A stretch of 64,000 nt of DNA, taken from NCBI RefSeq assembly GCF_902713615.1, contig NC_052157.1, positions 140,779,171 to 140,843,170 on the forward strand, written 5' to 3'. Of the stretch, positions 9,101 through 62,607 are shown one piece after another. Positions within the stretch are counted from its first letter, which is position 1; every line of letters starts with the position of its first letter. The stretch is from Scyliorhinus canicula (lineage: Eukaryota). The notes beneath the pieces are model-generated. The model saw only the letters and a list, made by a program, of their open reading frames with translations, did no database searches and was not told the DNA's origin. Both the position numbers and the translations under genes were made by a program.

Positions 9101-11083
9101 CATTCCAGCTTCTTCGGGCAACAATTTATCCTGGAGAAAGGAGAGTACCCTCGCTGGGATGCCTGGAGCGGCAGTAATGCTTACCACACTGAGAGACTCA
9201 TGTCCTTCCGCCCTCTTTGCTCTGCTGTAAGTCAGTTCACCGTTAAATATCTGTCGGGCTTGAAACTAGCTCAGCATATGCTCCACAGTGCAACATATGT
9301 CACCAAATAAGGTCACATTACACAGTACGGCTTCTATGATTAATCTCTTTGAGGCTATTTTTTTAATAAACTGCATTAACATAAATTCATAGACTGGTAA
9401 CAGCACAGAAGTCCGTTCAGCCCATCGTGTCCATGTGGTTCTCTGCAAGAGCATTTCAGCTTGTCTTGCTCCCCAGCCCTGTCCCTGTAGCTCGGCAATA
9501 TTTCTCTCTTCAGGCGCTTATTTCATTCCCTTTTGAAAGCCACAACTGTCAGTGCTCTCCAGAACCTAACCACCCACTGCGTTAAAAAACGTTTCTCCCC
9601 CATATTGGTTCTTTCCCCGATCATCTCAAATCAATCTGGTTCGAGATGCATTCGCAAACATGAATGACATTCTCCCCATATAACTCCATTATAGTGTCCA
9701 AATGGTTAGGTCGGGTTTTGGAGATAGGATGGAGACTGTGGGCTTAGATAGGGTGCTCGTTCCAAGGACTGGTACAGACTCAATGGGCCTAATGGTGTCC
9801 TTCTGCACTGTAAGTTCTATGAATTTCCTCTCAACCTTCTCTCCTCTAATCCCAGCTTCTCCAATCTATCTTTGTGCTTCAGCTGGATGAGGTCGAACCA
9901 GTGCTTTGTAAAGGTCCATCCCACTTCCTTGTTTGTGCACTCTGTGTCTCCCACTTAAAAAGCTGAGAATCCTAAATGCCTCTGTGTCCATCAGCACAAA
10001 GAGATATGGAAAGTGATCAGGGAGCAATGTAGAGTCACAGCATTGTCAATATCTGGACTTGCAACTCAACTCAAAAACTGAAAACTCCTCCTTGTGCTGA
10101 AAAAACATCGATAACAAAAGTCTGTGACAATTATGTTAAAGCTTTACAAAGCACTTCTTGGACCACAAAAGCAAAATTGTATTTGGAGGCAGTCACCGTG
10201 TTCCAAAAAGATATAATTACATTTTAACGGGCAAAGGGACAAGTTTAATCCCAGATTTAAAGTGAAGCAGTACAAGGACAGGTACAGAAGTGTAAGTTTC
10301 ACACTCTTTATAATAAATACAAGATGTTAAATGGTAGAGATATACTCCCATTAATTCTCCAATACAGACTTTGTTTTGTTCACTCACAAATGTATTGCAG
10401 CATCTACAAACATACTCAATTTTTCCTTCAGCACCATAAAGAATCCAAAATCGTAATTTTTGAGAAGGAAAACTTCATTGGAAGACAGTGGGAGATGTGT
10501 GATGACTATCCCTCTTTGCAAGCTATGGGCTGGTGCAACAACGAAGTTGGATCCATGAAGATTCAAGCTGGCGCGTAAGTTGTGCTTTTTCATGTTTAAA
10601 AAACAATGAAGTTGTGTTGTTGCAGTTTAAGGAAGAAAACTTAGCTGGATCCAGCAAAGTCTTGCCCATCTGAGGATGTTGATCAGTTGCCACTCCTAAA
10701 ATAATAGTTTACCCGAGGACTGAAAATAACCTATTTGACCAATTCCAACTAGTTCACAAGTAACCAAAGTGGGATGTCCAAGCTGGGCCACCTATAGTTC
10801 CTGAGACTTTGCAATTCAGTCCTGGAAGGCCTGGCACTTGATCCCATTTACAGCGATATGCCCCGATTCATATTTATGAAACTTAACACGTATTCAAAGT
10901 TAATTTACATAAGGCATGCTCTTTTTCAACCCCAGGTGGGTGTGTTACCAGTACCCAGGATACCGTGGCTTCCAGTACATCATGGAATGTGATCGTCATG
11001 CTGGAGAATACAAGCACTGGAGAGAGTGGGGATCTCATGCTCAGACCTTCCAGATCCAGTCACTCCGCCGCATTCAGGAGTAA
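6143..11083 (+). CDS. CRYBA1: beta-crystallin A1, 5 coding exons: 6143-6175, 6294-6412, 9085-9226, 10432-10574, 10936-11083 (194 aa)
   Basis: Spliced translation [194 protein letters not shown]. All introns are GT-AG and phases are consistent, with one Greek key per exon. Confidence 0.97.
6294..6412 (+). CDS. CRYBA1: CRYBA1 exon 3 (Greek key 1)
   Basis: TTGCAG acceptor, 119 nt, GTGAGT donor. Confidence 0.97.
7256..7652. mobile_element. hAT (Charlie-like) MITE in CRYBA1 intron 3
   Basis: TIR CAGGGGTGGGCAAAC / GTTTGCCCACCCCTG; subterminal GGCCCGC repeats; no TSD seen. Confidence 0.8.
8161..8470 (+). mobile_element. HE1/V-SINE-type tRNA-derived SINE
   Basis: A/B boxes, core GGGTGCTCCGGTTTCCTCCCACAGTCCAAAGATGTGC, CR1-like tail. 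Confidence 0.85.
8814..9049 (+). mobile_element. HE1-type SINE, A-tailed variant
   Basis: Same head and shortened core; A-rich tail; TSD-like GTAAAA(G/C)CTGATC. Confidence 0.85.
9085..9226 (+). CDS. CRYBA1: CRYBA1 exon 4 (Greek key 2)
   Basis: TTGTAG acceptor, 142 nt, GTAAGT donor; [16 protein letters not shown]. Confidence 0.97.
10432..10574 (+). CDS. CRYBA1: CRYBA1 exon 5 (Greek key 3)
   Basis: CTTCAG acceptor, 143 nt, GTAAGT donor; [11 protein letters not shown]. Confidence 0.97.
10936..11083 (+). CDS. CRYBA1: CRYBA1 exon 6 (Greek key 4) to TAA
   Basis: CCCCAG acceptor; [11 protein letters not shown]...[10 protein letters not shown]. Confidence 0.97.
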
Positions 11084-11230
11084 AGCACAACATCAATAGA
11101 GCATCGGAGGGGGGGCCACAGAGGAAATCTATAGGTATAATTGGTACTGCATTCTGTTGTAGAACAACAACTTCTGTACTGTGATCGATTTAACATCTCA
11201 TCACGATTACTTGGTCTATTGAAATATTCA

Positions 11231-11236
11231 AATAAA
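11231..11236 (+). terminator. CRYBA1 polyadenylation signal
   Basis: AATAAA 148 nt after the stop, followed by a T/GT-rich tract. Confidence 0.75.
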
Positions 11237-11582
11237 GTTATAAAAATGTTTCTTTCCCTTTGTCTCAAGTTGCACATGAGCAGACAAGCACAGCAGTCTG
11301 TTGAATTCTGGGAAACCACAGAGAGAGAAATGAGGCTCAGAGCACATCAACCCACGAGTGGGCTGTGTTCATTCTCACAAACACCTGAGTCAGCCTGTAT
11401 TCGATTTATGTTTTGCTTTTCGGTAAGAGTCCAACTAAAAGTTTTATACATCCATCTGCTTCAAAGTAAATCAAAATGGCAGCTTAAACGTTACTATTTT
11501 GTCATCCATTGAACTGAACTCCATGAGAAATGGCATTTCTCAGGTGGGGCTGATTCATGGACTAAATTATCTAAAACAAACA

Positions 11583-11875
11583 CTATAAATACACTCTGCA
11601 CTTAGTGTTTACATAATGAAAATTTGCTCCATCGCACACAACCGGTTGAGCGCTCTTTCTTTTCCACATGGTTAAGGAGTCTAAGTGGCCTGGCCAGTTT
11701 GGTAGTTTAATTCTGCTCAGACAGCAGAACTCTTCAGCGAGTGCCAGCTGGAAACTACGTGATGTTGACTGTCCCCAGTGATTGGCTGACAATGTTTCAC
11801 CCAGCAACTCCCCAACATGAAGGATGATATCTCCTTTGAAATCGCTCAAGCAATCAAGAGAAAACGTTGAAGACT
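11583..11875 (-). CDS. Methyltransferase-like gene, last coding exon to TAG
   Basis: GTTCTGCAG acceptor; phase matches exon 3 (G|AG = Glu); same frame as ORF 11583..11849. Confidence 0.9.
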
Positions 11876-14800
11876 CTGCAGAACATAAACAATGTTATCA
11901 AATGTTCATTAAAAATGCAGAACAGTTTCCTGTACTTACAAAAGTGGTCACGACCTTCAACTATTCTAGTAATTTACTGCCGTTAAATATTTTTCTGCCC
12001 AAATTACAGGCAATTGCGCTGTTACTTTAATAATTTGCGACAATGCGAAATGTTAAAAGCAATGCAATTGGACGTATTAAACAAATTACAACCTTTACTT
12101 TCAGATAATCTTGTTGTGCATTTAAAGTTAAATAAATTGTGCAACTAAAGATATAATCTCACTGCTAAACTTCTTGATTAGTAAAATGCGTATTGCAAAG
12201 ACGTTCCATCTAGCTATTTTCTAAATCTTTTAACTTCAATTAAGCTATGAATTCCAGCAATGTACCAACCAAATCCCACTTGAACTTTGTTTAAATTTTG
12301 TACATAAAGTTATGTCACTTTTCTAAGCGTGCCATTGGGAAAGCATAATAATTACTTTGAGCCAGAGAAAGTTTTCCCCAGAATGCGAGTGTAAGCCCTA
12401 CTTTCTTACCGTCTATGTCGGGCCAGGCCAGAAAAAGCACTCTGTCAGGAAACTGCTCCAGGATTTCAGGGCCACTGGTCTAAAGTTACAAAAAGAAAAT
12501 GTAGCAATCAATACTTTCTGCCCTATCTTAGATTTAAGTCAACTATTTGTAAAGACTTTGGTCACCTGGCAACAATTTAAAAAAACATCTATAATTTTGA
12601 TCAATACTGTCAAATTAGTCAAACGATAGTTGGTGATCCAACACATCAGCAGCAGCAGAATTGTACTCAATCACAATCTGTAACCTCCTGGCCCGGATTA
12701 TCCCCCACTCTACCATAACCATCAACGCTGGTTCAATGAAGCATGAAAGAGGGCATGTCAGGAGAAGTACCAGGCTTACCTAAAAATGAGGTGCCAATCT
12801 GGTGAAGATAGAACACAGGACTACTTGCGTGCCAAAGAATAGAAGCAGCATGTGATAAGACAGAACTAAGCTATCCCACAACCAACGGATCACACCTAAG
12901 TTATGCAGTCCTGCCACATCCAGTCGTGAATGGTGGTGGACAATTAAATAACTAACAGGAGAAGGAAGCTTCACAAATATCCCCATCCTCAGCCCATCAC
13001 ATCAGAATAAAAGATGAGGTTGGAGCATTTGCAATCACCTTCACCGAAAAGGGCCGATTGAATGGTCCATCGTGACCGCCTCTTCAGGTCCCCAGCATCA
13101 CAGGTGTCAGTCTTCAGCCAATCCAATTCACTCCTCGTGATATCAAGTGCTGAAGGCACTGGATATTGCAAACGTTTTAGGCCCTGACAATACTCTGGCA
13201 GTAGTACTGAAGACTGGTGCTCCAGAACTAGCCATGTCCCTAGCCAAGCTGTTCCAGTACAGCTACCCACTGGTATCTACCCGCAATGTGGGAAATTATC
13301 CAGGTATGGCCTGCCGCAAAAAAAGGCAAATCCAACCCGACAAATTAAGACTCCACAAGTCTACTCTCGATCATTAGCAAAATGGTGGAAGGTGACATCA
13401 ACGGTGCTACCACGCAGCACTTACTCAGGAATAACGTGCCCACTGATGCTCAGTTTGGGTTCCGCCAGAGCCACTCTGCTCCTGGCCTTATTACAGCTTT
13501 AGTCCAAACACGTACAAAAGAGCTGAATCCAGAGGTGAAGTGGGAGTGACTGTCCTTGTCATCAAGGTAGTACCAGACCGAGTGTAGCACCAAGGAGCCC
13601 TAGCAAACTTCTCAGGGGAGAATTCTCCACTGGTTGGAGTCATTTCAAGGTAGGAACATACAAACATATGAATTAGGACCAGGAGGAGGCCATTCAGCCC
13701 CTCAAGCCTGCTTCGTCATTTGGTAAGATTATGGCTGATCTGAATATGGCCTCAACTCAACTCTCCTGCCTATCCCCTACACCTTTTGACAACAATCTAT
13801 CTGTCTCTGCCTTAAAAATAGTCAATGACTGTGCCTCCACAGCTCTGTGGGGAAGAAAATTCCTGATTCATGACCCTCTATGAGAAAACATTTCTGCTCA
13901 TCTTGGACTTTAATGGGAGACCAGTTATTCTTAAACTGTGCCCCTAGTTCTAGTGTCGCCCCCCAAAGAGAAATATCCTCTTGGCATCCACATGCATCAC
14001 CTTTAAGGATGTTTCAATAAGATCACCTCTCATTCTTCTAATCTCCAAAATATACAGGCTCAACCTGTCCAACCTTTCCTCATAAGATCCTTATCCCAGA
14101 ATCAGTCAAGTAACCATATTCTGTATAGGTTCTAATGAAATTAATTCTTAAATAAGGAGACCAAAACTATATTCAGTAATCTAGATGTGGTGTCACCAAT
14201 CCTTGTAGCAGGACTTCCCTACATTATATTCCATTCCCCTTCAATAAACATCAACATTCCATTGGCCTTCCTACTGACTAGCTGCATGTGTCTCTGTGTA
14301 CCAGGGATATAAGATCCCTGTGTACTGCAGAGTTCTGCAATCTCTCTCCATCTAATTAATATTCTGCATTTCCATCCTTCCTATAAAAATGGACAAGCTC
14401 ACATTTTCCCACTTGATATCCATTTGCCAAATATTTGCCCATCCACTTAACCTGTCTATATCCCTTTGCAGACTCACGTGCTCTTCACAAGTTAGTTTCC
14501 TACCCATCTCGTGTCAACAGAAAAGGTTTTTTTAACTTTAAAGTACTCAATTTGTTTTCCAATTAAGGGGCAATTTAGCATGGCCAATCCACCTACCCTG
14601 CATATTGTTGGGTTGTGAGGGTAAGACCCAAGCAGACACGGGGAGAATGCACAAACTTCATACAATGACCCAGGGCCGGGATCAAACCCAGGTCCTCAGT
14701 GCCGTGAGGCTGCAGCGCTAACCACAGTTCCATCTGTGAACAGAAAAGTTAACAAGCACGCATTTGGTCCCTTCATCAAAGTCATTGATATAGATTATAA

Positions 14801-17800
14801 TTAGTTTAGGCCCCATCATTGATCCTTGTGGCACTCCACTTGTTAACACCTTGCCAACCATTAAATGACCTATTTATGCCTAATCTCTGTTTCCTGTTAG
14901 CTGGTCAATCCTATATCTACGCTAATATGTTGCGCTCTACACCATGAGCTCTTGTTTTGTAGTAACCTTTGATGTGGCACCCTGTTAAATGTCTTATTGA
15001 AATCCACGTACACCACATCTACAAGTCTTCCTCTATCCTCATTGCTTGTTACTTCTTCAAAGTACAAAGGATGACTGATCTGGTGGTTGGAGTTTCAGGA
15101 TATCACTGCAGGGATTCCGCAGGGTATAATGTCCTAGATGCAAGCAACTGCAGCTGCTTCCTCAATGACCTTCCCTCCAACTTAGGTCAAAAATGGAGAG
15201 GTTCAATGATGATTGCACAATGTTCAGCACCATTTGCAACTCCTCAGATATTGAAGCAATCCGCGTCCATATGCAGTAAGATCTGGGCAATAATCTTGGG
15301 CTGATAAATAGCAAGTACAACTTGTGCCGCTTAAGTGTCAGGCAATGACCATCTCCACCAGGAGAGAATCTAACCATGTCCTCGATGTTCCATGGCATTG
15401 CCATTGCTGAATGGTAATGGCACTATCAACACCCTGGGAATTTCCATTGACCTGAAATTAAACTTTACCAGCCATATAACTACTTTGACTGCAGGAACAA
15501 GTCAGAGACTGGGAATTCTACAGCAAGTAACCCACCCCCTGACTCCCCAAAGCCTGTCCACCATCTACAAGGTACAAGTCAGGTGTGTGATGGGATACTC
15601 CACTTACCATTTGGATGGGTGAGCTCCAACAATACTCGAGAAGCTCGACACCATTCAGGACAACGTATCTGCCTTGAATGGCAACTCATCCACCACCTTC
15701 AACATCCACTCCCCCCACCACTGGTGCACAGTGACAGCAGTGTTTACCATCAACAAGACGCACTACAGAAACTCACCAAGGCTTCTTCAACAGCACCTTC
15801 CAAACCTGTGGCCTCTACCACTGAGAAGAACAATGGCAGCGGATGCATGGAAACACCACCACGTGCAAGTTCCCCTGAAAACCACACACCATCCTAACGT
15901 GGAACTATAGTGCAGTTCCTTCACTGTTGCTTCATCAAAATCCTAGAACTCCCTTCCTAACAGCACTCTGAGTGTACATATGAACTGCAACGGTTCAAGC
16001 TGACTCCTCACCACCACTTTCACGGGAGCAATTAGGGATGGCCACATCCCGTGAACAAATAAGAAGAGTATGTAATTTGTACAGTTCAACTCCATTTAAT
16101 ATGGAGTATTGAATATCCATATTGATTGAAATTTAATATAAACTACATATTTACTTATTCAGATGATCATAATTCATGTTCATACATTGCTTTTTTCCCC
16201 CATTTCTACGGGATGTGGGCTTCGCCGGGTAGGTCAGCGTTTGTTCCCCATCCCTAATTACCCTTGAGAAGGTGGGGATGAGCTGCCTTATTGAACTGCT
16301 GCAGTCCATGTGGTGTAGGTACATCCACTGTGCTTTTAGGGAGGGAGCTCCAGGATTTTGGAGGAAATAAATTTGAACTGTAACGCTGAATTTGCACCAT
16401 TCATGTTCTTAGGGCATCTCAAAGCAATGAATCACACTTTGGAGTGTACTCGTTTTTTGGAAAATGATGTTAATCGCTCATCTCATCTTGCTTATGTGTA
16501 AGATAGCTCTCGAGCTTGTTACAATGTTAGTTTCTACTGCTCATTATTCATGAGAGCTTCAGCTTCAATTTGACTGTGCAAAATACTTGTATTTTGCCCC
16601 GTTTTAGAATTCAACACCATGCTCTGCTCAGAGCCAGTTATATTCCAGTTGAGAAAAGGGGTGTGACTTAAATAGTGCTGTTAATAAGAATGTCTGCATA
16701 CATTAGCTGCAGAAAGGTTTCTGTGAAAATTCAGTGAGGCCAGAACAGTAGATTTAGAAGTAACTGAAAACAAACAACAAACTTTATTAATATACAATTT
16801 TATGCAACATTTCAATGGTCAGCAATCCTATTTCCCCCAATTAAAATTTGGATCGAGCTGCAAGGGGGTATATGGTTCAAGTTGCACGCGTCAAAGATAA
16901 CAGCGAGCAATCAGCCATGTGGAACCTGAACATAAGAAGCAGATACAAGAATAGGTCAGACACCCACTTGATCCCAACTCATCTCCTGCCTCAGCTCCAC
17001 TTTCCCGCCCACTTCACCTATCCCTTGATTCTCTGAGACACTAAGATTTTGTCTATCTCAGCATTAAACACTCTCAACAATGGAGTATCGACATCCTTCT
17101 CGGTAACACAAGTCCAAACTTTCACAACACTTTGAGAGAAGAAATTTCTCATCGCCCCAATCTCAAATGATCGACCTCTTATTCTAAAACCATCCCCATA
17201 TGTTCTAGATTTTCCAACCAGGGGAAACGTCTTCTCCATGCTTACCTTGTCAAGCCCTTCACACCCTTCTATGTTTCAAAGAGATCACCTCTCATTTTTC
17301 TGAATTTCAGGGAGAATATATCCAATTTACTCAGTCTCTTATTGTAGGCCAAGCCTCTGTCCCAAGAAACAATCAAGTGAACTATCATAATCCCACCTCA
17401 ATTACACCACCCATCCTACTCCTGACTTGTGCCTCATAGATGGCAGAAAACTTTGGGAAATCAGGAGGTGGGTTACCTGCTGGGTGGCACAATGGTTAGC
17501 ACTGCTACCTCACAGCCCCAGGGAGTCAGGTTCAATTCCAGCCTTGCGTAATTGTCCGTGTGGAGTTTACACATTCTCCCCGTGTCCGTGTGGGTTTCCT
17601 ACGGGTGCTCCGATTTCGTCCCACAGTCCAAAGATGTGCAGATTAGGTGGATTAGCCATGATCAATGTGTGGGTTTAGGGAAAAGGGCGGGGGACTGGGC
17701 CTAGGAAGAGTGCTCTTAGGGTTTGTGTAGACCCGATAGGCCACACGGCCTCCTTCTGCACTGTTGGGATTCTATGGTGTGGAAGCATATCTTTCTTTGG

Positions 17801-20800
17801 AGATGGAGAGCAAAACTGTACACAACATTGTGTGTTTTCACCAAAGCCCTATACAAAGGTAGCAATAGCTCCTTATTCTTGTACCCCAACTTGTTGGAAC
17901 GCTCTAAGGCTGAACATTGAGTCCCTTGTTAAAGATTTGACAGGGAGTTTGCTCCAAGAACAGAACTTACCCATTTTCTGGGTGATTTTATTACTGAACT
18001 TTCATTTTACTGTATTTACTATTACAAGGTGTGCAAAAAAAAGTGTTTGCGGCCTCTGTTGATTCTCGAAGTCACGCTTCATTCCAAAGAGAATGCCCCC
18101 TAATCTAGCCAAGCTTGAGAACAGAGCGTTGGCTAATAGCCTTAAAGTCAGCAAACCGTCTTGCATCATCCTATCATACTATTCCATGTAGACCGTTGCA
18201 ACTTGAAACAACTACAGAAAGTAGCAGACACTTGTAAAATTGTCGCAACCAGCAGGAGAAGTCAACCAGGAACTAACCTGATGATCCTTTCAAATAGTGG
18301 TGTGGGACAGGAGGCTGGAATGGCCTTGGTCCTTTTGCTCATCTTCAGTAAGATAGGATGCTGGCGAGAGTGTTGAGCTCTGAAATGGCAGATACTGGCG
18401 TCAAACCAGCATTACATGCCAACTGATGATGTGATCTACCTATTCTTCATACTTATACAAACATTCAATGCACATGCTATTGCCTGCACCAATATGGCAT
18501 CTGGTGCAATTCACATTACACTATTCACACATACCACAGATGCGATCTTGGAGATCCAGGGGAACTTGTGAAGCCTAACTTCTCATCCATTTACTATTGG
18601 ATACAAATTAAGAATTTAGAAGGAAGGGAAAAAGATTTGTTGACTATACATGGGGAAAAAAAGTGTAAATATATCCTAGAAAGCTAGTGGTCTTTAGACT
18701 GATGTAGCTGCTTTGTTATTTACCAATCGAAAACTTGTTGACCGTATCCTGTTACCACCGGCGCACAGTGGCAGTCATGTGTTCCATCTATAAGATGCAC
18801 TGCAGCAACACACCAAGGCACCTTAGGCAGCACTTACAAATCCACGACCACTACCTCCTAGCAGGACAAGGGCAGCAGTAACCTGGCAAACCCACCACCT
18901 GGAGGTTCTCCTCCAAGTCACTCACCATCCTGACTTGGACAAATTTCACCGTTCCTCCACTGTCGCTGGGTCAAAACCCTGTATTTCCTTCCTAGCAGCA
19001 CTGTGGGTGTACCCACACACTATGGACTGCAGCGGTTCAAGAAGGCACCTCGACACCACCTTCTCAAGGGTAATTCATAGTGGGCAATAAATGCTGGATT
19101 ATTCAGTGACACCCACAATGAATGAATTTTTAAAAAATGTCACATTCCTCTATCATCACTGTCATCACAGGACTCGAATGGCTCATGTCATACATAATGG
19201 AGAAAGGGTCTTCATTCCATAATTCATTTCCCTGACTTATCCCTTGCCAATGCTGTAACCTCTTCCAAATCCTTGCTCTTTTGACTCTGGCCCTCTTTCG
19301 ATACTTCCCTGCTGCTTCACCTTCAATAGCACAGTCTTGGGCTGTCTAAAACCCCGAACTGTAAAATTCTCCCTCACACCTTAAGGCATGCCATTTTTGC
19401 AAGCCTCTGTTCCTCTCCTAAACTCTTCTACCATTGCTTGGCCTTTGAAAGCACGTCAAGATAGTGTACTACATGAAAGGTGCTAGGTAAATGCAGATTG
19501 TTGTTATGTGCAGAATTTGAGTCTATCATTTCGTTGAAGTAGATCTGCATCGACCTTCGATTTATTTTTTTCAAAGCTGAGTTATTGCAAAATCAGCTCT
19601 TTTCTTTTGAACTAAATTAAAGGTAAAACAAAGGTAGAGTTGTTGCAGTTTTAAAGTTTAAGGCAAATGAAGCAAAATAGAAAAGAAAATGCAAAGTTTT
19701 CTATAAGTCACTCCGAACATGTTATTTAGTGGAACCACACGCAAAGTGACAGACAGAAGTCCCCACCTCACACATGACTCAAGTTACTCTGTAAAAGTCT
19801 TGTACGTACCACAATCTCTGAATATCGCATTTCTGGCGGATAAACAATATTTTTGTCAAATGCTATCAGATCTACTCCTTGGCTCTTCAGCAGATACTCC
19901 CAATATCCTGTTCCCTAACATCAAAAAAGAAGCAAGATTAAACATGGTATGTTAGAATCACAACTGATGATCAATTATTTGATGTAATCCTTTCTGACTA
20001 CATTGTTACCAGTATCCTGACCATAGCCATCATTCCCAGCACGCTGATCTAACAGTCAACCACCCTCTGTCAAGAACTGCTGAAACATTTGCTGACATCT
20101 TGCCATTTACAGTTCTGGATCTGTGGTGTCCTGCCCTGAAAGTATTGTCTGGACTTACTTACTCTATTCTATGCGTCCTATTGGTCTATAAAATTCCCTC
20201 TTAGTCTTCACTTTTCATGGCTGAAGAGCTCAAGATTATCAAGGTCTCCTCCATACTCCCCTCGAAAACATCACAGATTTGCTACTTTGCGCAGCTCGGT
20301 GTTAATTCCCAAGGCTGGTTGGAGCCCTTATTTCAAAGTGATCATGAGTGTAGCAGTAATCCGGATTACAGCCTGTGCCCAGGGCAATGTACTACCTCAG
20401 CATGACTTTGCGACCGTACAAATCAGGAGCTGAAGTAGGCCATTCGGCCCCACCAGCCTGCTCCGCCATTCAATAAGATCACGGCTGGTCCATTTGAGTT
20501 TCGAATTGCACATTCGCATCTATCCTGATAACCTTTGATTCCCTCGTCTAACAGGAATCTACCTACCTCCACCTTAAAAGTATTTACCGACCTCCATCTC
20601 CACTGCCTTCTGAGGCAGAGAGTGCCAAAGTTGCAAAACTCTCGGATAGAGAGTTCCTCCTCAACTCCCGTCTTAAAATCCCCTCATTTTAAAACAGTGC
20701 CCCCCACCGCCGCCCCCCCCCCCCCGAGTACTATACTAACCCACAAGAGGAAACATCCTTTCCAAGTCCGCCTTGTCAAGACTGTTCAAGATCTTCTATA

Positions 20801-23800
20801 CTTCAATTAAGTCACACCTCACTCTTCTTTTTTTTTTAAATAATTTTTATTCAAATTTTTCAACTACAATTTTCTCCCAAAATAAAATAAACAGAGTATA
20901 AAAATAAACAGAACCCCCCCAATACAAAGCAATAAATTAATAACAATACAAAAAAACAAGAAAGTAGCAAACAAACAGTCGCAAAAACAAACCCCCTTAA
21001 CAGATCCCTAACCCCCCCCCCCCCCCCCCCCCCCGGGTTGCTGCTGAGATTGACCACCCTCTAACCCTCCGCCAGAACATCGAGAAAGGGCTGCCACTGC
21101 CGGATGAACCCTTGTACCGACCCCCTCAGGGCAAACTTGATATTCTCCAGCCTGATGAACCCGGCCATGTCATTAACCCAGGCCTCTGGGCTCGGGGGCT
21201 TCGCGTCCCTCCACTGTAAAAGAATCCTACGCCGGGCTACTAGAGACGCAAAGGCCAGAATGCCGGCCTCTTTCACCTCCTGCACTCCCGGCTCCGATGC
21301 TACCCCAAAGACCGCGAGCCCCCAGCCAGGTTCCACCCTGGAGCCGACCACCTTGGACAAGGTCCCCGCCACCCTCTTCCAGAACCCCTCCAATGCCGGA
21401 CACGCCCAGAACATGTGGGTATGGTTCGTCGGGCCCCCCGAGCACCTCCCACATCTGTCCTCTCCCCCAAAGAACCGGCTCATCCTGGAACCAGTCATGT
21501 GCGCCCTATGCAGCACTTTCAACTGAATCAACACACCTCACTCTTCTAAACTTCTTTTCCAAACTCCAATTGAAACAAAGCCTTTCCTCATAAGACAACC
21601 CGCTCATTCCTGATATCAATCTAGTAAACCTCCTCTGAACCACCTTCAATTTTGGATGATCTGGACTCAACTGACTTTAAACCGTGTTTTTCTAGTTACT
21701 TATTTGTTTTTGCCGCACTTTCTTCAGCCATCTTGAACACCTACCTAAACATTAAACATTCCCCTTGGAAAGTTTTTGTCCACACATGAAAAACTTTTGG
21801 CTCCAAATTTTAATTCCAAACACAGCACCTTTTCATCCATACTGCTTTACATCAGGAAATACCACTCCATCTGTAAACTCTATTGATTCTTTGCAGTCCC
21901 AATCCCCTTTCCCGGCATGGCTCATCCACAAGTCTAACTACCTTGTATAATGACTGTAATTCCAGAGCATTAATAAACAGGACATCAAATCGAGAACCCT
22001 CTGGGCAGCCTGTTCCCATTGAAACGTGCAAAAATCTTACTGGGCTCAACAAGGTAGATGCAGGAAGATGTTCCCCCTGTCTGGGGTGTGGTGCCATCTG
22101 GATCCAGGGGACACAGTCTCAGAAAAAAGGATACATCATATCGAACTGAGATGAGGAGTAATTTCTGCACTCTGAGGGTGGTAAATCCTTGGAATTCTCT
22201 ACCCCACAGGGTTGTGGAGGCTCTGTCATTGAGTATGTTCAAGATAGATCAATAGATTTCATAGATGCATAAAATTTACAGTGCAGAAGGAGGCCATTCG
22301 GCCCATCGAGTCTGCACGGGCCCCTACAAAGAGCACCCTACTCAAGCCCACTCCTCCACCCTAGCCCCACAACCCAGCAACCCCACCTAACCTCTTTTGG
22401 ACATCAAGGGCAATTTATCATGGCCAATCCACCTAGCCCGCACATCTTTGGACTGTGGGAGGAAACCGGAGCACCCGGAGGAAACCCATGCAGACACAGG
22501 GAGAACGTGCAGACTCCGCACAGACAGTGACCCAAGCCGGGAAATGAACCTGGGACCCTAGAGCTGTGAAGCAACTGTGCTAACCACAATGCTACCATGC
22601 TGCATTTCTAGATAGAAAAATAAGGGATATGGGGATAGTGCAGGAAAATGGCGTTGAGGGAGAAGATCAGCCATGCTCCAACTGAAGAGCAGAGCTGCCT
22701 TGAGGAGCCAAATGTCGAACTCCTGCTCTCATTTACTCAGTTCAATTCAGTTCAATCCAAATCCGTGACTCACCTGGGTTTGTAACAGACACAGGCGGTA
22801 CATTATCATTTTGGAGGTTTAGCTAGATGCTGTCAAATGCATTTCTTCCTAATTTGCGATATTATCTTCTCAAAATGTTATATCGTTGAAAAGGGACATG
22901 GGAGATGTATTTCAGGTTTTTTTTAAATTCTAGAATTCCTGTAGTGCAGGGGAGGCCATTCGGCCCATCGGGTCTACACTGACCCTCTGAAAGATCACCT
23001 AACTGAAGCATACTCCCCCATCCTAACCCCATCACCCCACCTAACCAAGACATTTTTGGACATTAAGCTGCAATTTTGCATGGCCAATCCACCTAACCTG
23101 CACATCTTTGAATTATGAAGAGCATTTATAAATTGAATTTGGGGAAACTATTTACTTTCATTGGGGGTCTGTGACAAGGGATCATCAAGTTAGAATTGTC
23201 ACTTTTCTCAGAGTGAGAGGCAGTAGAAATGTCTTTACACAGATTGCCCCATGGGTTAATTGGGGCAGAGAACATTGCTCCATGGAATTGGTAAGAAGTC
23301 TTACAACACCAGGTTAAAGTCCAACAGGTTTGTTTCAAACACGAGCTTTCGGAGCACTGCTCCTTCCTCAGGTGAATGATTTGGTGAATGATTCACCTGA
23401 GGAAGGAGCAGTGCTCTGAAAGCTCGTGTTTGAAACAAACCTGTTGGACTTTAACCTGGTGTTGTAAGACTTCTTACTGTGCTCACCCCAGTCCAACGCC
23501 GGCATCTCCACATCATGGAATTGGTGGCAGCGAGGCATGGTGGTGGTGGTGGAACTGGAAGTCATTGATTCTCCCGGGAAGAGGTCAATGGGAGCGTGCT
23601 CAGTACACAGTACACTGCAAAAGATAATAATGGCATTTTCAAGTGCCCCAGGATGGTATGACTTTCTTCGGCTGGAAAAGGTCAAATACGAATTAAGGGG
23701 TTTGGCGGAGGGCTTCGAGGCAAGGTGGGTGAATATTCGTAGCCACGTTTGAGGAGCTGTCAATTGTGGAGTATGGAGTAAAGCACAGGGTAAATGGGAC

Positions 23801-26585
23801 CTCCTCTTGTGCAAGAATGAGCCAGATACAGTTTAAAGTGGTGGGGCGAGAATGAGTGGGTTCTTTCAGGAGGCAGCAGATGAGTGTGAGAGGTGTGGAG
23901 GGGGGGGGGGGGGGGGGGGGGCAGCGAATCACGCGCACATGTTTTGGGATTGGGAAAAATTGGGAAGATTCTGGGTGGGAGTGTTCGTGGCCTTAGCCAG
24001 GATAGTGGAGGAGGACGTGGACCCAGACCCTTTGGTGGCGATATTTAGGGTTTCAGCGAAGCCAGAGCTCATGGAGAGGAGGAAGGCCGATGTCGTGGCC
24101 TTCGCCTCTCGGATTGCACGGCGGTGGATTTTGCTTGATTGGCGGTCGGCATTGCCACCTGGGATAGCGACTTGGTTGGGTGACCTGTACGACTTCCTGC
24201 GGTTAGAGAAGATAAAGTATGAGTTAAGGGGCTCTGCAGAGGGGGCTTGAGGAAAGGTTGAGGATATTTGTGACCGTATTTGAGGAGCTGTTCGTCGCAA
24301 AGGGACCGTACGGACCGTATAGATGATTGTTGGGAAGTATGTTTCATAGAATAGAACAGTACAGCACAGAACAGGCCCTTCGGCCCTCGATGTTGTGCCG
24401 AGCCATGATCACCCTACTTAAACCCACGTAACCCGTATACCCGTAACCCAACAATCCCCCCATTAACCTTACACTACGGGCAATTTAGCATGGCCAATCC
24501 ACCTAACCCGCACATCTTTGGACTGTGGGAGGAAACCGGAGCACCCGGAGGAAACCCACGCACACACGGGGAGGACGTGCAGACTCCACACTGACAGTGA
24601 CCCAGCCGGGAATCGAACCTGGGACCCTGGAGCTGTGAAGCATTGATGCTAACCACCATGCTACCGTGAGGTGTTTATTTGCTGTAACCTGTTTTGATAC
24701 ATATTTGTAATAAAATATATATATTTTAAATGTTTGAGGAGCTGTTCGTCGCGCGGGGTGGGGGGGGGGGGGGGGGGGGGGGGAGGAGGGGGGTGAAAAA
24801 GGGAACATTTGTACAAACTGTATCGTTGTGTGTTGGGGAGCTTTGCTCCGCGAATTGCTCATGTTTTGTAACCATTTATAGAAGTTTGGAATAAAATATA
24901 TTTAAAAGAAGAGATTGTAACTTTTTGCCAGTCAACTTTTAGTGCCACCTAGGTTTTTTTTATTTGTTCATGGGACGTGTACATCGCAGGCTGTGTCAGC
25001 ATTTATTACCCATCCCTAATTGCCCTTGAGGGGCAGTCAAGAGTCAACCACATTGCTGTGAGTCTGGAGTCACATATAGGCCAGACTTGGTGAGGCCGGC
25101 AGATTTCCTTCTCTAAGGGCCATTAGCGAACCAGATGGGCTTTTAGGACAATCGACAACGGTTTCATGGTCATCTTTAGACTTTTAATTTCATCAGCAGT
25201 AGTCTGGGTCTCTGGATTACTAGTCCAGGTACAATACCACTACGCCACCGCCTCCCCTTGACATGCCTTTCACCTGAGCCTGCTTTCAGCTGACATGCGT
25301 TTACAGGACAATCAACAGATTTGGAAAGCGAGCAAATAATCTGGATATTGTACATGAGGTGACAGGGAGGGGACTGTAGCCATCTGAGATGGCAACCTGC
25401 AAAGGACCATGGGAATTGTGGCCAACCCAGGACTCAGACAGATACAGAGCTTGTGTGAATTTGCAACCCAGATAGCTAGACCTGATCGAAACCCCCGCTC
25501 GTTTGCATTCTAATGGCCCATTTCCCCAGAACAATAGGACTGCACTCAAAACCGATACAGACACAGACTAATCGGCACCAACCCCCAACCACCAAAGGTC
25601 AATGGCCGCTAAGGACCCGCCCAGCCACCAAGGCAACCCCCCTTTATTGGACAAAATCGAAAGCAGTGATCAAAGCCTGTCGAATTATTGGGTCCAAGAT
25701 TAAGGACCGCCCCAAAGAGCGCAAAACCCTAGAGGGATAAAAAGAGACACAGCCATGTGTTCGGTCTCTTTTTGACCCGGCCTGTGCCAGCCCAACTGCA
25801 GCATAACGACCAGACAGCCAAGTTCAAGACCAACGATCGCTACCTGACAGATGAGCTCAACAGAGACAGAGTCACTTATTCAAACCAGCCACGTGAGATC
25901 AAGATAAAGCCCTTATCAATCTGCACAGCGCCGGTCACCCTGAAGTTAGGCATAGGTTATTGTAGCTGATAGGTGTAGTTTAACTTGTAGTATATTGTGC
26001 TTGCATGTCAAAGTAACCCTTGTGTGTAAATAAACCATCTTTGAACTTCAACTGACTAACTGGTTGTGTGTGTGGTCATTTGACCGATATATGGGAAAGC
26101 CTTGTGGATCAGTAAGAGAAACAGAAACACCCACAGTACTGGCCACACTGTTGGGACATAACATCAGATCATTAATAGAGCCTCATCACATTATTGACAA
26201 CAGGACCTACATCACTGAGCCCAGACCCTTGTTGATGTCCCAGCAGGAGTGGCAAACAATGCGATCATGTTGCAATTCGGGCGTTACTTACAGCACCAGC
26301 TGAGACCACTGGCTGGTTTAAATCTGAAATAAAGGTGATTGCCTCCGCGTTCGGAACTGAAAAAGAAAATAATATTTGCAGCTTTTGGCAACTCAGTTCG
26401 TCAACATTCCTCAGTAGCCGGACCAGCTCTCTCCTTCGCCCATGCTGCAACTCTGGGTCACAAAACCGGTGGACGTCTGCCGGAAACTGCTCCATTTTGG
26501 CGCGATACATTTTGTAATACAAGTTCTCCCCCCCGCACTTTCTCAGTTCGACTGTCTCCCACTGCATTTCGCCATCTGCCTCCAT
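11583..26585 (-). CDS. Uncharacterised class I SAM-dependent methyltransferase-like protein, 4 coding exons: 26585-26292, 19914-19810, 12479-12410, 11875-11583 (253 aa)
   Basis: Exons join in frame (phases 0,0,1) at canonical GT-AG sites. Junction 1 reconstitutes the Gly-rich motif I VVSAGA|GTGYW, followed by VDLIAFD, PDRVLFLAWP, IILHVGE and LPNWPGHLDSLTMWKR. Confidence 0.9.
12410..12479 (-). CDS. Methyltransferase-like gene, exon 3: TSGPEILEQFPDRVLFLAWPDID
   Basis: TTTTGTAACTTTAG acceptor, 70 nt, GTAAGA donor (phase 1). Confidence 0.9.
12690..16060. repeat. Decayed CR1-group LINE (plus, about 12690-13650 and 15060-16060) interrupted by an opposite-strand CR1 (about 13655-15055)
   Basis: RT remnants (GPDN, PLAKLFQ, QFGFR) and CR1 3' tails. 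Confidence 0.65.
14527..14728 (-). mobile_element. HE1-type SINE, A-tailed variant, inserted in CR1
   Basis: Reverse complement of the 8814 type; flanking AACAGAAAAG duplication. Confidence 0.8.
17482..17775 (+). mobile_element. HE1-type SINE
   Basis: Head, core and tail match the other copies. Confidence 0.85.
19810..19914 (-). CDS. Methyltransferase-like gene, exon 2: GTGYWEYLLKSQGVDLIAFDKNIVYPPEMRYSEIV
   Basis: TTTTTTGATGTTAG acceptor, 105 nt, GTACGT donor. Confidence 0.9.
20829..21531 (-). mobile_element. 5'-truncated L1-clade LINE (ORF2 C-terminal Cys-rich region, G-rich 3'UTR, AATAAA and A tail) inserted in an older CR1
   Basis: QLKVLHRAH..RCGRC..HTHMFWACP; perfect 16-bp TSD CACACCTCACTCTTCT (20813-20828 and 21532-21547). 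Confidence 0.92.
22258..22604 (-). mobile_element. HE1-type SINE
   Basis: Reverse-complement core GGACTGTGGGAGGAAACCGGAGCACCC. Confidence 0.85.
22930..23110 (-). mobile_element. HE1-type SINE 3' half
   Basis: Tail and partial core. Confidence 0.7.
23291..23515. mobile_element. Penelope-like element remnant: inverted pseudo-LTR palindrome (about 87-bp arms)
   Basis: 23291-23377 is the near-perfect reverse complement of 23391-23477. Confidence 0.8.
23391..23428 (+). ncRNA. Minimal type I hammerhead ribozyme motif (mirror copy on minus at 23340-23377)
   Basis: CAC-CTGAGGA-A-GGAGC AGT GCTC(C/T)-GAAA-GCTC-GTG: CUGANGA/GAAA core, stem II hairpin, palindromic AGCT stem III. Confidence 0.65.
23650..24910 (+). 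mobile_element. Tandem 3' fragments of L1-clade LINEs with an inserted SINE
   Basis: CERC..HAHMFW, LYDFLRLEK.KYELRG present twice, TTTGAGGAGCTGT three times, two AATAAAATATAT tails. Confidence 0.8.
24346..24668 (-). mobile_element. Young HE1-type SINE inserted into an L1 3'UTR
   Basis: Complete core; TTCTATTCTATG tail shared with the CR1 at 2208. Confidence 0.9.
25355..26135 (+). mobile_element. Solo LTR (about 780 bp) in intron 1 of the methyltransferase-like gene
   Basis: TG..CA ends, GATAAAAA TATA-like motif at about 25736, AATAAA at about 26029, flanks GTACA/GTACT. Confidence 0.55.
26292..26585 (-). CDS. Methyltransferase-like gene, coding exon 1 (98 aa)
   Basis: GCAATGG Kozak in a CpG-rich patch; ends ...PVVSAGA then GTAAGT donor. 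Confidence 0.88.
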
Positions 26586-26720
26586 TGCTGCCTCCCCCTG
26601 CGGGAACTGTCGCTCGCTCTGACGGTGGAGGAAGTCAGCACAACATTAAAGCGGCGCAGCACCTCCCCGCGGCAAAACAAATCACTGCAGGCAAGATGCC
26701 GACGAAGAAGTTTCCTTCAA
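26330..26720. promoter_or_regulatory. CpG-rich patch over the first exon/promoter of the methyltransferase-like gene
   Basis: Local CpG enrichment in non-repeat sequence within an AT-rich background. Confidence 0.5.
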
Positions 26721-28355: not shown

Positions 28356-28419
28356 CCTATATTATGATAAATGCTGCTAGACCTGGGCGTTTGTGACATC
28401 TTTTTTGATTTATTTCCAG

Positions 28420-28680
28420 TATCCAGTCTGCACGTCCTCCCCGTGTGTGCGTGGGTTTCCTCCGGGTGCTCCGGTTTCTTCCCACAGTCCAAAGATGTGC
28501 GGGTTAGGTAGATTGGCCATGCTAAATTGCCCGTAGTGTCCTAAAAAGTAAGGTTAAGGGGGGAGTTGTTGGGTTACGGGTATAGGGTGGATACGTGGGT
28601 TTGAGTAGGGTGATCATGGCTCGGCACAACATCGAGGGCCGAAGGGCCTGTTCTGTGCTGTACTGTCCTATGTTCTATGT
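28420..28680 (+). mobile_element. 5'-truncated HE1-type SINE (head fragment at about 27872-27975)
   Basis: Core plus TTCTATG tail. Confidence 0.8.
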
Positions 28681-56679: not shown

Positions 56680-57149
56680 GTATGTATGCTATATATTAAT
56701 TTGTTTTAATTGACCAGAATGTATAATGGAAATATCCGAACCTCATCTGAACCAGGTGAATAAGTTTATTTATTTCAATATATGTTCATTTGGTGCTCAT
56801 CATCTTTTGGATTAACGTTATCAGCACAGTTTGATAAAGTCAGTGTTAAACCCGATGTTAAACTTGATATAAGCTTTGAATGTATCGTAGTCATATCACA
56901 TTAAATAGAATTTATTACAATAATTTTGCTTCTGTTATTGGTTTGAATATATGTTAAGAGAGCACCAACTCCTTTTTGCTTGCAGAAAGTCAACAAAGTC
57001 AGCTTTGAAAAGTCGACATGTAACAAATATACACTTTCAGTAACTTAATGACTTATCAAGAGCTTGATTAATATGTTTATTGAAACTGTGAATTTCTGTC
57101 ACTTCTTCTCCCCCAAACTATTGATTAAAATCAATAAGTACAGTGATAC

Positions 57150-61520: not shown

Positions 61521-61803
61521 AAAAGAATAAATAAAAACAACCAAGTAGATGTTTTTCCTTTTGAAGATGTTCTGATTGATTTGAGTTATCAAAATAACAA
61601 CATTTTTTTGTCCTGTCACAAAAATCTAGACTTTCATAGTACTCTACGTGGCAGAAATCTTATTCTGTATTCACCTCGAGAGACAGTTTGTATTCTACAA
61701 TGCAAATGTGATAACGTACAATTTTGGCTGTTGTGCTTACTATTTCCTAAATTGACTCTTCTTGTGACATGTATGCAAAGTAATGCTATTCTTCCTTATC
61801 CAG

Positions 61804-62082
61804 GTGTAGGTATCGCTATTAATGGTATCACGACTAACTACGGAATCATCATGAATCTCTCGGATTCTCTTACGTTAAAGTGCACAGCAGTCAACAACAC
61901 CCAGGATGAAGAGTTAGTTTGGATTCGTGACGACAGAGTAATTAACTTGAAGTCCCTGAATCGGATCAATGTTAGCACTGTCTGTGTTGACCCAATTACA
62001 GTAAATGACGATGAAGTTACTTTCAGCTGCCGTTTAAATAAAGATTCTAACATTAATACAACTGTGCAATTGGACATCAAGT
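61804..62082 (+). CDS. TMIGD1: TMIGD1 first Ig-like domain exon (gene continues beyond the window)
   Basis: Phase 1-1 exon of 279 nt; LKCTAVNNTQDEELVWIRDDRVINLKSLNRINVSTVCV...FSCRL resembles TMIGD1 Ig1 (LICAVQNHTREEELLWYRE...NKINSSSVCV...FTCRL). TMIGD1 and CRYBA1 are both on human 17q11.2. Confidence 0.88.
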
Positions 62083-62607
62083 GTGAGTAACCTACCGATC
62101 TTGGCTGAAAAGACCAAATTGTTAAGAGGAACCTAGGAGAGAAAGGGATAAGCCTAATGAAGAAATTGAAAAGTTTCTAATTTTCATCCGGTCACAGTAT
62201 TAATTAGTAGCAAATGAATGCCAAAATGAAGTATGCCATTAAAGAGCATGCAGCAAGGAAACAATTTGGAGTTGACTAAACGTTGATACAGGCAGTGCTG
62301 TTGGATTATGTGACAGCAGTTGTTAGCGTAAGGAGGCAGTGGCATAGTGGTATTGCCCCTGAATTAGTAATCCAGGCACCCAGCTTTGGGGACCTGGCTT
62401 CAAATCCCATCACGGCGGATGGTGAAATTTGAATTCAATAAAAATCTGGAATTTAAAAAGTCTAATTGTTGATTGTCATAAAAACCCATCTGGTTCACTA
62501 ATGTCCTTTAGTGGAAAGAAATCTTCCATCCTTACCTAGCCTGGCCAACATGTGACTCCAAACCCACAGCAATGTGGTTAACTCTTAACTGCCCTCAGAA
62601 ATGGCTA

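What the first reader, a model, noticed from the sequence alone, without database searches (positions are those of the whole stretch)
11583..26585. Hidden intact 4-exon gene for an uncharacterised SAM-dependent methyltransferase-like protein between CRYBA1 and TMIGD1
Seen: four minus-strand exons spread over 15 kb of repeats splice in frame at canonical sites into a 253-aa ORF with no stops. The Gly-rich SAM-binding motif I is split exactly across intron 1 (VVSAGA|GTGYW), so ORF tracks miss it. Downstream motifs (DLIAFD; PDRVLFLAWP; GDIILHVGE; LPNWPG..D.LT.WKR) and the upstream FSVPN.EAI..I match my recollection of a hypothetical methyltransferase family from bacteria, fungi, algae and invertebrates. 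I know of no human orthologue (it is not a METTL that I recognise). Motif I has Ser where class I MTases usually have Asp/Glu. Inference: an ancient enzyme of unknown substrate retained in cartilaginous fish and lost in some other vertebrate lineages, or an old horizontally acquired gene that later gained introns.
Basis: partly seen in the sequence, partly recalled or inferred. Interest (0 to 1): 0.85.

Follow-up and report, generated by a model that had tools for sequence, protein, structure and literature searches.

The report
Expressed orphan methyltransferase-fold gene, already annotated
The four exons are a real, transcribed catshark gene, already in RefSeq as "uncharacterized LOC119974936", for a 253-residue methyltransferase-fold protein of an unstudied family that animals inherited from their single-celled ancestors and that was not found in mammals, other amniotes or ray-finned fishes.

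Summary
Minus-strand exons 26585-26292, 19914-19810, 12479-12410 and 11875-11583 join at GT-AG sites into an intact 253-aa ORF. RNA contigs from five runs in at least four studies show all three junctions.

The gene is not hidden. The protein is 100% identical to NCBI [quoted passage not shown].

The AlphaFold model (pLDDT 94) matches only class I SAM-dependent methyltransferases (Z up to 11.8), with no closest subfamily. The shark protein and five relatives match no Pfam family above threshold.

Orthologues turned up in sharks, rays, coelacanth, lungfish, amphibians, amphioxus, acorn worms, cnidarians and choanoflagellates. More distant members occur in diatoms, oomycetes and haloarchaeal viruses. 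None turned up in amniotes, ray-finned fishes, cyclostomes or protostomes. All are unnamed.

Vertical descent is supported and late horizontal transfer is not:
- All three introns, including the one splitting GA|G of motif I, sit at identical positions and phases in amphioxus and Nematostella.
- The gene tree follows the species tree.
- Shark-skate dN/dS is 0.10-0.18.

The Ser in motif I belongs to the animal/choanoflagellate clade; the diatom/oomycete-type sequences keep Glu.

The substrate is unknown. This is a new, uncharacterised family within a known superfamily, of moderate interest. The scan's earlier notes hold nothing on this gene.

The parts
26292..26627 (-). Exon 1: about 42 nt of 5' UTR plus CDS from the ATG at 26585 (aa 1-98). 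Encodes the N-terminal helices, the FSFSVP motif, strand beta1 and the first half of the Gly loop (VVSAGA).
   Evidence: RNA contigs cover 26291-26627. Donor GT at 26291-26290.
19915..26291 (-). Intron 1 (6377 nt, phase 0). It splits motif I between A98 and G99.
   Evidence: Same position and phase in skate, Xenopus, amphioxus, Saccoglossus and Nematostella. Loose ends at 26291 read exon 2.
19810..19914 (-). Exon 2 (105 nt, aa 99-133). Encodes GTGYW, helix A, strand beta2 and the invariant D118. It is skipped in a minor in-frame isoform.
   Evidence: Exon1-to-exon3 contigs in X3 and X4. RefSeq isoform X2 has 218 aa.
12480..19809 (-). Intron 2 (7330 nt, phase 0).
   Evidence: Loose ends at 12480 read the end of exon 2 in X1-X4. 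Same position in skate, amphioxus and Nematostella.
12410..12479 (-). Exon 3 (70 nt, aa 134-156 plus 1 nt). Encodes strand beta4 and the LAWPD motif.
11876..12409 (-). Intron 3 (534 nt, phase 1).
   Evidence: The 11875/12410 joint is seen directly in contigs of X1-X4. Partly retained in one X4 contig.
11583..11875 (-). Exon 4 coding part (aa 157-253, TAG at 11585-11583). Encodes HVGE, the WGQSTS loop and LPNWPG..D.LT.WKR.
10665..11582 (-). 3' UTR, at least this long. It is continuous with exon 4 in RNA contigs and overlaps the last exon of the convergent crystallin gene in antisense. The poly(A) site is not determined; the only ATTAAA on this strand within 10001-11583 is at 10249.
   Evidence: Contig lengths: the X3 record of 1281 nt runs 635 nt past 11300. 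Signal scan. The 3' end itself is inferred.
6282..11083 (+). Neighbouring convergent beta-crystallin gene (194 aa, CRYBA1-like). Not part of the gene but defines the conserved synteny.
   Evidence: The same arrangement is seen in Chiloscyllium and Rhinoraja.
61788..62087 (+). Ig-domain exon of the divergent upstream neighbour (TMIGD1-like; orthology to TMIGD1 itself not tested).
   Evidence: Pfam ig, E 3.8e-6. 52% identical, E 6e-33, to an exon of the skate's head-to-head Ig gene.

Best explanation
This is LOC119974936 of the small-spotted catshark. It is a four-exon, normally spliced gene for a soluble, single-domain 253-aa enzyme of the class I (Rossmann-fold) S-adenosylmethionine-dependent methyltransferase (MTase) superfamily. 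It belongs to a distinct family that has no Pfam model and no characterised member.

Shown:
- The gene is intact, transcribed and spliced.
- It is under purifying selection.
- It was inherited vertically since before the cnidarian-bilaterian split.
- It is predicted with high confidence to adopt the MTase fold.

Inferred mechanism: SAM (S-adenosylmethionine) binds at the C-terminal edge of the sheet. The Gly loop G97-x-G99-x-G101 after beta1 and the invariant D118 at the end of beta2 (ribose hydroxyls) would hold it. The methyl group is passed to a substrate held in a pocket lined by family-invariant aromatic and acidic residues: Y102, W103, W152-P153-D154 after beta4, H176-x-G178-E179 after beta5, the W190-G191 loop, W217, D222, W227 and R229. 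The five N-terminal helices would act as a lid.

The substrate is unknown. My ranking, by inference only, is a small molecule (about 45%), a protein (about 30%), then tRNA or DNA (about 25%).

A minor isoform skipping exon 2 removes half of the SAM site and should be catalytically dead.
For: Gene and expression:
- Intact ORF with canonical splice sites.
- All junctions seen in RNA contigs of five runs.
- 100% identity to the RefSeq model.

Fold:
- AlphaFold2 pLDDT 94.2, pTM 0.91, with beta-alpha order typical of class I MTases.
- In the Foldseek search of the PDB, at least 500 hits pass E 0.001 and the 50 listed are nearly all SAM methyltransferases.
- The unbiased PDB-wide VIA search gave top-50 hits that are nearly all class I MTases or close derivatives, Z 9.7-11.6.
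- COMT scores Z 11.8 over residues 6-234.
- Weak sequence matches to MTases lie exactly at motif I to beta2.
- 16 of 105 longer relatives hit Pfam Methyltransf_23 at E 1e-4 or better.

Conservation:
- D118, Y102, G178 and G191 are invariant, and about 20 more columns are at least 90% conserved, in 78 sequences.
- dN/dS between shark and skate is 0.10-0.18.

Descent:
- Intron positions and phases are shared with skate, frog, amphioxus, acorn worm and sea anemone.
- The tree is congruent with the species tree.
Against: - No experiment on any member. SAM binding and catalysis are inferred from fold and motifs only.
- The motif I acidic residue is Ser in the animal clade.
- The shark protein and five relatives reach no Pfam MTase model. 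Sequence-level E-values against solved MTases are weak, best 0.019.
- The structural ranking is flat, so no subfamily or substrate class can be assigned.
- Context clues conflict. Halovirus homologues sit beside DNA MTases or inside a tRNA array. Some protist relatives are fused to SET/LSMT or MYND modules. No fusion recurs in a scan of 105 members.
Confidence: 0.75

Rival explanations
1. It is a non-catalytic methyltransferase-fold protein: a SAM sensor, scaffold or pseudoenzyme. The fold is kept but no methyl group is transferred.
For: Ser replaces the canonical acidic residue of motif I in the whole animal/choanoflagellate clade. An exon-2-skipped, SAM-site-less isoform is annotated from coral to newt and is seen in catshark RNA. 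No Pfam MTase model is reached.
Against: The Gly loop and D118 are intact and invariant. The residues where class I enzymes place their active site (after beta4 and beta5) are among the best conserved, which is unusual for pseudoenzymes. The diatom/oomycete-type sequences keep the canonical Glu. From general knowledge, not tested here, some active class I enzymes lack the motif I acid.
Confidence: 0.17
2. It is a horizontally acquired gene, from a bacterium, virus or alga, that later gained introns in vertebrates.
For: The distribution among eukaryotes is patchy. Homologues occur in haloarchaeal viruses and, as Atlas or structure leads, in bacteria.
Against: All three shark introns are at identical positions and phases in amphioxus and Nematostella, and intron 1 also in frog and acorn worm. 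The tree recovers vertebrates (100/99), chondrichthyans (99/97), animals (94/90) and an animal-plus-choanoflagellate clade (100/99). Synteny with the crystallin and Ig genes is conserved between shark and skate. Any transfer would have to predate animals.
Confidence: 0.03
3. It has a well-characterised one-to-one mammalian orthologue under another name, which would remove the novelty.
For: None found. The possibility rests only on the limits of the searches.
Against: Protein searches with frog, shark and profile queries returned no amniote protein. The structure search of all reviewed UniProt models, which include the human proteome, gave only bacterial MTases at TM 0.45 or less. A full-text search for six locus or accession names found no paper.
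Confidence: 0.02
4. The real product is the read-through fusion with a beta-crystallin, in which exons 1-3 are spliced to a downstream crystallin gene.
For: One catshark contig joins exon 3 to a sequence encoding AVATMSHSGT. That is the junction in RefSeq fused models of Carcharodon and Amblyraja, and Narcine has a similar fusion.
Against: It appears in one run at low depth, whereas exon 3-to-exon 4 joints appear in all four runs. The fusion truncates the fold after beta4. Exon 4 is as conserved as the rest from cnidarians to sharks, and species with no adjacent crystallin within 10 kb (Nematostella, amphioxus, Saccoglossus, Xenopus) keep the full gene.
Confidence: 0.03

Closest known systems
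Class I SAM-dependent methyltransferase (MTase) superfamily, e.g. catechol O-methyltransferase (COMT), METTL21A/D, KsgA and TcaB9
   Same: Predicted seven-stranded Rossmann-like fold with helices on both sides. GxGxG loop after beta1. Acidic residue at the end of beta2. N-terminal helical cap as in COMT. Z 10-11.8 over about 150-170 residues.
   Different: Only 9-16% identity. Flat ranking with no closest subfamily. No Pfam MTase model reached by the shark protein. Ser instead of Asp/Glu in motif I. Its own signature motifs ([FW]-[SA]-[VI]-P, GYW, [WY]PD, HVGE, PWG[QR][ST][TS]S, LP.WP...D.L[TS]VW[KR]R) are not those of any named family checked here.
PHROG 19090 and halovirus proteins (PhiCh1 ORF83, phiH1 PhiH1_425, HGTV-1 gp67 'AdoMet-MTase')
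   Same: Significant sequence similarity over the whole catalytic core: E 6.5e-13 for the shark protein, down to 9e-19 for the oomycete relative, and 26-29% identity by tblastn.
   Different: The viral proteins are shorter (about 190-215 aa) and also uncharacterised (PMC6210493). Their context is viral DNA methylase genes or a tRNA gene array. No such context exists in animals.
RefSeq 'uncharacterized protein LOC...' orthologues (Chiloscyllium LOC122564008, Protopterus LOC122788362, Xenopus tropicalis XENTR_v10005090, Saccoglossus LOC100378907, Nematostella LOC116603372)
   Same: True orthologues: 52-87% identity over the full length, same introns, same length.
   Different: Nothing material. 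None has a name, a Pfam domain or a paper.

Membership tests
Class I SAM-dependent methyltransferase superfamily | Rossmann-like alpha/beta fold with a seven-stranded sheet | tested here: met
   High-confidence model with alternating strand and helix elements, beta1 to beta7 at 93-96, 114-117, about 133, 147-151, 173-178, 206-213 and 223-229. Top hits of the Foldseek and PDB-wide VIA searches are nearly all class I MTases or close derivatives. This rests on a predicted structure, not a solved one.
Class I SAM-dependent methyltransferase superfamily | Gly-rich motif I (GxGxG) directly after beta1 | tested here: met
   G97-A-G99-T-G101. G97 is conserved in 75/78, G99 in 77/78 and G101 in 59/78 with Ala in 18.
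Class I SAM-dependent methyltransferase superfamily | Acidic residue at the end of beta2 that binds the SAM ribose | tested here: met
   D118 follows strand 114-117 and is invariant in 78/78 sequences. Its contact with SAM is inferred.
Class I SAM-dependent methyltransferase superfamily | Acidic residue inside motif I (hh[D/E]hGxGxG); common but not universal | tested here: not met
   S95 in the shark and in 35/78 relatives. E in 42/78, the diatom/oomycete-type sequences.
Class I SAM-dependent methyltransferase superfamily | Binds SAM and transfers a methyl group | not testable with these tools
   Needs a binding assay and an activity assay on recombinant protein.
Pfam Methyltransf_23 (PF13489) and other Pfam MTase families | Score above the family's gathering threshold | tested here: not met
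   No hit for the shark exons or for a frog orthologue. Sub-threshold hits of 12-16 bits against a cut-off of 27 for three relatives. 16 of 105 longer relatives match at E 1e-4 or better.
Cation-dependent O-methyltransferases (COMT type) | Sequence membership and a metal-binding Asp/Asp/Asn triad after beta4 and beta5 | tested here: inconclusive
   Best structural Z (11.8) but only 10-14% identity, and other MTases score within 1 Z unit. D154 and E179 lie after beta4 and beta5, but their equivalence to the COMT triad could not be checked without coordinates.
PHROG 19090 (viral, function unknown) | Significant match to the family profile over most of its length | tested here: met
   E 6.5e-13, residues 68-229 on profile positions 37-191 of 191.

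The most novel reading that the evidence does not exclude
The family is a new functional class of methyltransferase. Its substrate, a metabolite or a macromolecular mark, would exist in cnidarians, basal deuterostomes, sharks, lobe-finned fishes and amphibians but not in amniotes or ray-finned fishes. The exon-2-skipped isoform, annotated from coral to newt and lacking the SAM site, would be a deliberately made non-catalytic regulator and not splicing noise.
Probability: 0.2. Interest if true: 0.65.

Novelty: new member of a known kind. Interest (0 to 1): 0.4.

Why it matters
The gene model is not new, since RefSeq already lists it. What remains open is the function of a strongly constrained enzyme family. 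It has about 290 clusters at 50% identity and spans choanoflagellates to amphibians, plus diatoms, oomycetes and haloviruses. It has no Pfam model, no name and no paper found here.

It was not found in mammals, birds or ray-finned fishes, which include zebrafish, nor in protostomes, which include flies and worms. That may explain why it has escaped study. It is present in Xenopus tropicalis and Nematostella, where knock-outs are routine.

Identifying its substrate could reveal a methylated metabolite or mark that was dropped independently by amniotes and ray-finned fishes. The locus is also a clean example of intron positions conserved since before the cnidarian-bilaterian split, including one that splits the cofactor-binding loop.

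Tried and rejected
- Pfam on single exons and on six full-length relatives gave nothing above threshold. NCBIfam gave nothing.
- Profile searches of PDB sequences with alignments A1 and A2 gave only weak motif I matches, best E 0.019.
- Domain fusions seen in AlphaFold DB clusters (SET/LSMT, MYND, GIY-YIG) were tested as a functional clue. A Pfam scan of 105 long members found no recurrent partner, so the clue was dropped.
- Literature searches by locus names and by lineage-loss terms found nothing. The phiH1 genome paper lists the viral homologue as uncharacterised.
- The sequence spliced to exon 3 in the chimeric contig is not in the window.
- The Ig-like neighbour of the Saccoglossus orthologue shows no detectable similarity to the window, so deep synteny with the Ig gene is not supported.
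- Ten intronic stop-to-stop ORFs have no Pfam domain.
- DNA of other sharks could not be fetched because the files were too large or the protein was not on record. dN/dS was therefore computed against a skate, where dS is near saturation.
Full report
**1. The observation.**
Reading the four stated stretches on the minus strand and joining them gives 294 + 105 + 70 + 293 = 762 nt. That is 253 codons and a TAG stop. Each intron has a polypyrimidine tract and AG before the next exon and GT(A/R)AG-like donors after the previous one. Phases are 0, 0 and 1. The Gly-rich loop is split as VVSAGA|GTGYW.

RNA data support every junction. Contigs of four runs carry the 11875/12410 joint. Their loose ends at 12480 read the last 30 nt of exon 2. 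Loose ends at 26291 in X1, X2, X4 and X8 read the first 30 nt of exon 2. Parts of the introns next to the exons have zero depth, so this is spliced RNA. Transcripts start near 26627.

**2. Identity.**
A whole-library phmmer search with the exon 4 peptide found 291 family representatives. A search with the best full-length hit returned named proteins. One of them is 253/253 identical to the spliced product. It is NCBI [quoted passage not shown]. The gene is therefore annotated, not hidden. Its CDS range on the assembly is 15,003 bp, equal to 26585-11583.

Isoform X2 (218 aa) lacks exactly exon 2. Catshark contigs joining exon 1 to exon 3 were seen in X3 and X4.

**3. Fold.**
With a 78-sequence alignment, AlphaFold2 gives pLDDT 94.2 and pTM 0.91. 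The model has five N-terminal helices followed by a beta-alpha core.

| Search | Result |
|---|---|
| Foldseek, PDB | at least 500 hits pass E 0.001; the 50 listed are nearly all SAM methyltransferases (MTases), best E 3e-6, TM 0.35-0.45 |
| VIA re-alignment | Z up to 11.8 (COMT, residues 6-234) |
| VIA, 48,161 PDB representatives, independent of Foldseek | top 50 nearly all class I MTases or close derivatives, Z 9.7-11.6 |
| AlphaFold DB, Swiss-Prot | only distant bacterial MTases |

The ranking is flat, so the superfamily is clear but no subfamily is. The Swiss-Prot result shows no human counterpart.

At sequence level the link to MTases is confined to motif I and beta2. Among 105 longer relatives, 16 match Pfam Methyltransf_23. 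PHROG 19090, of unknown function, matches at E 6.5e-13.

**4. Conservation and the cofactor site.**
In the 78-sequence alignment, Y102, D118, G178 and G191 are invariant. The following are at least 90% conserved: P78, G97, G99, W103, L148, L150, P153, D154, C165, G171, E179, Q199, L214, P215, W217, D222, W227 and R229.

D118 follows the second strand, which is the position of the ribose-binding acid of class I enzymes. This placement comes from established knowledge of the fold; the contact itself is inferred.

Position 95, where most class I enzymes have Asp or Glu, is Ser in 35 sequences and Glu in 42. The shark, frog, amphioxus, acorn worm and sea anemone orthologues carry Ser, and the family consensus carries Glu.

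**5. Distribution and descent.**

| Found in | Not found in |
|---|---|
| sharks, skates, an electric ray | amniotes |
| coelacanth, lungfish | ray-finned fishes |
| frogs, salamanders, caecilians | cyclostomes |
| amphioxus, hemichordates | chimaeras |
| corals, octocorals and Nematostella | tunicates |
| choanoflagellates | echinoderms |
| diatoms, oomycetes | protostomes |
| haloarchaeal viruses | |

These absences depend on annotation and on the word prefilter of the search. No TBLASTN of genomes was possible.

Exon structures were recovered from fetched loci. All three shark introns are at the same codon and phase in amphioxus and Nematostella. The skate shares all three, and intron 1 also in Xenopus and Saccoglossus. 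Exons 2 and 3 are 105 and 70 nt in shark, skate, amphioxus and Nematostella.

A maximum-likelihood tree of 50 sequences recovers vertebrates (100/99), chondrichthyans (99/97), amphibians (99/97), animals (94/90) and an animal-plus-choanoflagellate clade (100/99). That clade is separate from the diatom and oomycete clade.

Shark-skate dN/dS is 0.10-0.18 (dN 0.18, dS 1.0-1.9, near saturation), and 0.12 for the catalytic core. The one coding variant seen in RNA, 26396 G>A, turns CTG into TTG at Leu64 and is synonymous by my reading of the codon.

Together these results support vertical inheritance with several losses. They argue against a late horizontal transfer followed by intron gain.

**6. 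Surroundings.**
About 500 bp past the stop lies the end of a convergent 194-aa beta-crystallin gene, with + strand exons at 6282-11083. Its C-terminal peptide looks like CRYBA1; that is from memory and was not tested. The same tail-to-tail pair exists in Chiloscyllium and Rhinoraja.

In the skate the upstream neighbour is a head-to-head Ig-domain gene. One of its exons matches window 61788-62087 (+) at E 6e-33. The order Ig gene / this gene / crystallin is therefore conserved in elasmobranchs. In the catshark the gap to the Ig exon is about 35 kb. It contains long ORFs at 37-50 kb, where earlier notes describe Gypsy elements, and a reverse-transcriptase fragment at 52300-52728.

The gene's 3' UTR runs at least to 10665 in one contig. 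It therefore overlaps the crystallin's last exon in antisense.

**7. What it most likely does.**
Fold, Gly loop, invariant D118 and strong conservation of the loops after beta4 and beta5 point to an active SAM-dependent methyltransferase (confidence about 0.75). The main rival is a non-catalytic SAM-binding or scaffold protein (about 0.17).

The substrate cannot be assigned, and the clues conflict:
- The best structural scores and the small single-domain format resemble small-molecule O- and N-methyltransferases.
- The pattern of repeated lineage losses is more typical of accessory metabolism than of core RNA or protein modification. This is inference.
- Halovirus homologues lie right after an N4/N6 DNA methylase gene, with a 4-nt overlap, or inside a tRNA gene array.
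- Some protist relatives in AlphaFold DB are fused to SET/LSMT or MYND modules, but no fusion recurs.

I rank small molecule above protein above nucleic acid, with low confidence.

**8. Novelty.**
The locus is already annotated. The family is uncharacterised everywhere it was found. It has no Pfam family. Six locus or accession names appear in none of the searched full texts. It is a new family within a known superfamily. It is moderately interesting, and it is testable in Xenopus and Nematostella.

Noticed in passing
window 19810-19914 (exon 2) with junction 26292/12479: An in-frame isoform skips exon 2 and so removes G99-V133: half of the Gly loop, helix A, strand beta2 and D118. Catshark RNA shows it, at roughly a fifth of the exon-2-containing form in X3. 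The same 35-residue deletion is annotated as an isoform in Heterodontus, Rhinoraja, Bufo gargarizans, Ascaphus, Lissotriton and the coral Stylophora.
   Followed up: partly
window 12410 (exon 3 donor) to a target outside the window: One X2 contig (432 nt, depth 5.6) splices exon 3 to a sequence encoding AVATMSHSGT. That is the junction of RefSeq 'beta-crystallin B3-like/B1-like isoform X1' fusion models in Carcharodon and Amblyraja, and Narcine has a similar fusion. The target exon is not in the window, so a read-through would have to cross the antisense crystallin gene.
   Followed up: partly
window 10665-11583: Convergent overlap. The crystallin CDS ends near 11083 and has an AATAAA at 11231 (+). 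The methyltransferase gene's 3' UTR runs the other way through the crystallin's last exon. Several strandless contigs stop exactly at 10936, the crystallin exon boundary, probably because the assembly graph branches there.
   Followed up: partly
L003:10001-11871 and L003:13893-15672: Branchiostoma belcheri carries a tandem duplicate of the gene. Its exons are 94-97% identical at protein level to the first copy.
   Followed up: no
L001:10192-10596: The Nematostella orthologue has one extra intron (phase 2, after residue 63) that is absent from the shark, skate and amphioxus genes.
   Followed up: no
L004:3929-4504 and L005:3929-4573: Haloarchaeal virus homologues. PhiCh1 ORF83 overlaps by 4 nt the end of a putative N4-cytosine DNA methylase gene. 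HGTV-1 gp67 ('AdoMet-MTase') lies inside the virus's large tRNA gene array and overlaps a tRNA-Leu annotation.
   Followed up: partly
window 11847-12179: One X4 contig (333 nt, depth 9.7) runs from exon 4 into intron 3, so the intron is partly retained in that run.
   Followed up: no
window 26396 and 11388: Two variants appear in RNA contigs. 26396 G>A (X8) is synonymous at Leu64. 11388 A>G (X1, X4) lies in the 3' UTR.
   Followed up: partly
window 8150-8360, 17480-17760, 22400-22600, 24480-24600, 28410-28630, 57140-57640: Translated ORFs from non-coding parts of the skate locus match these repeated window segments at 35-90% identity. This points to an interspersed repeat family shared by skate and catshark. 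It also accounts for the short 95-99% identical RNA contigs at 25900-26115 and 12616-12700.
   Followed up: no
window 52300-52728: A stop-to-stop ORF matches Pfam RVT_1 (E 5e-8). It is a reverse-transcriptase fragment outside the Gypsy elements noted earlier at 37.8-50.5 kb.
   Followed up: no
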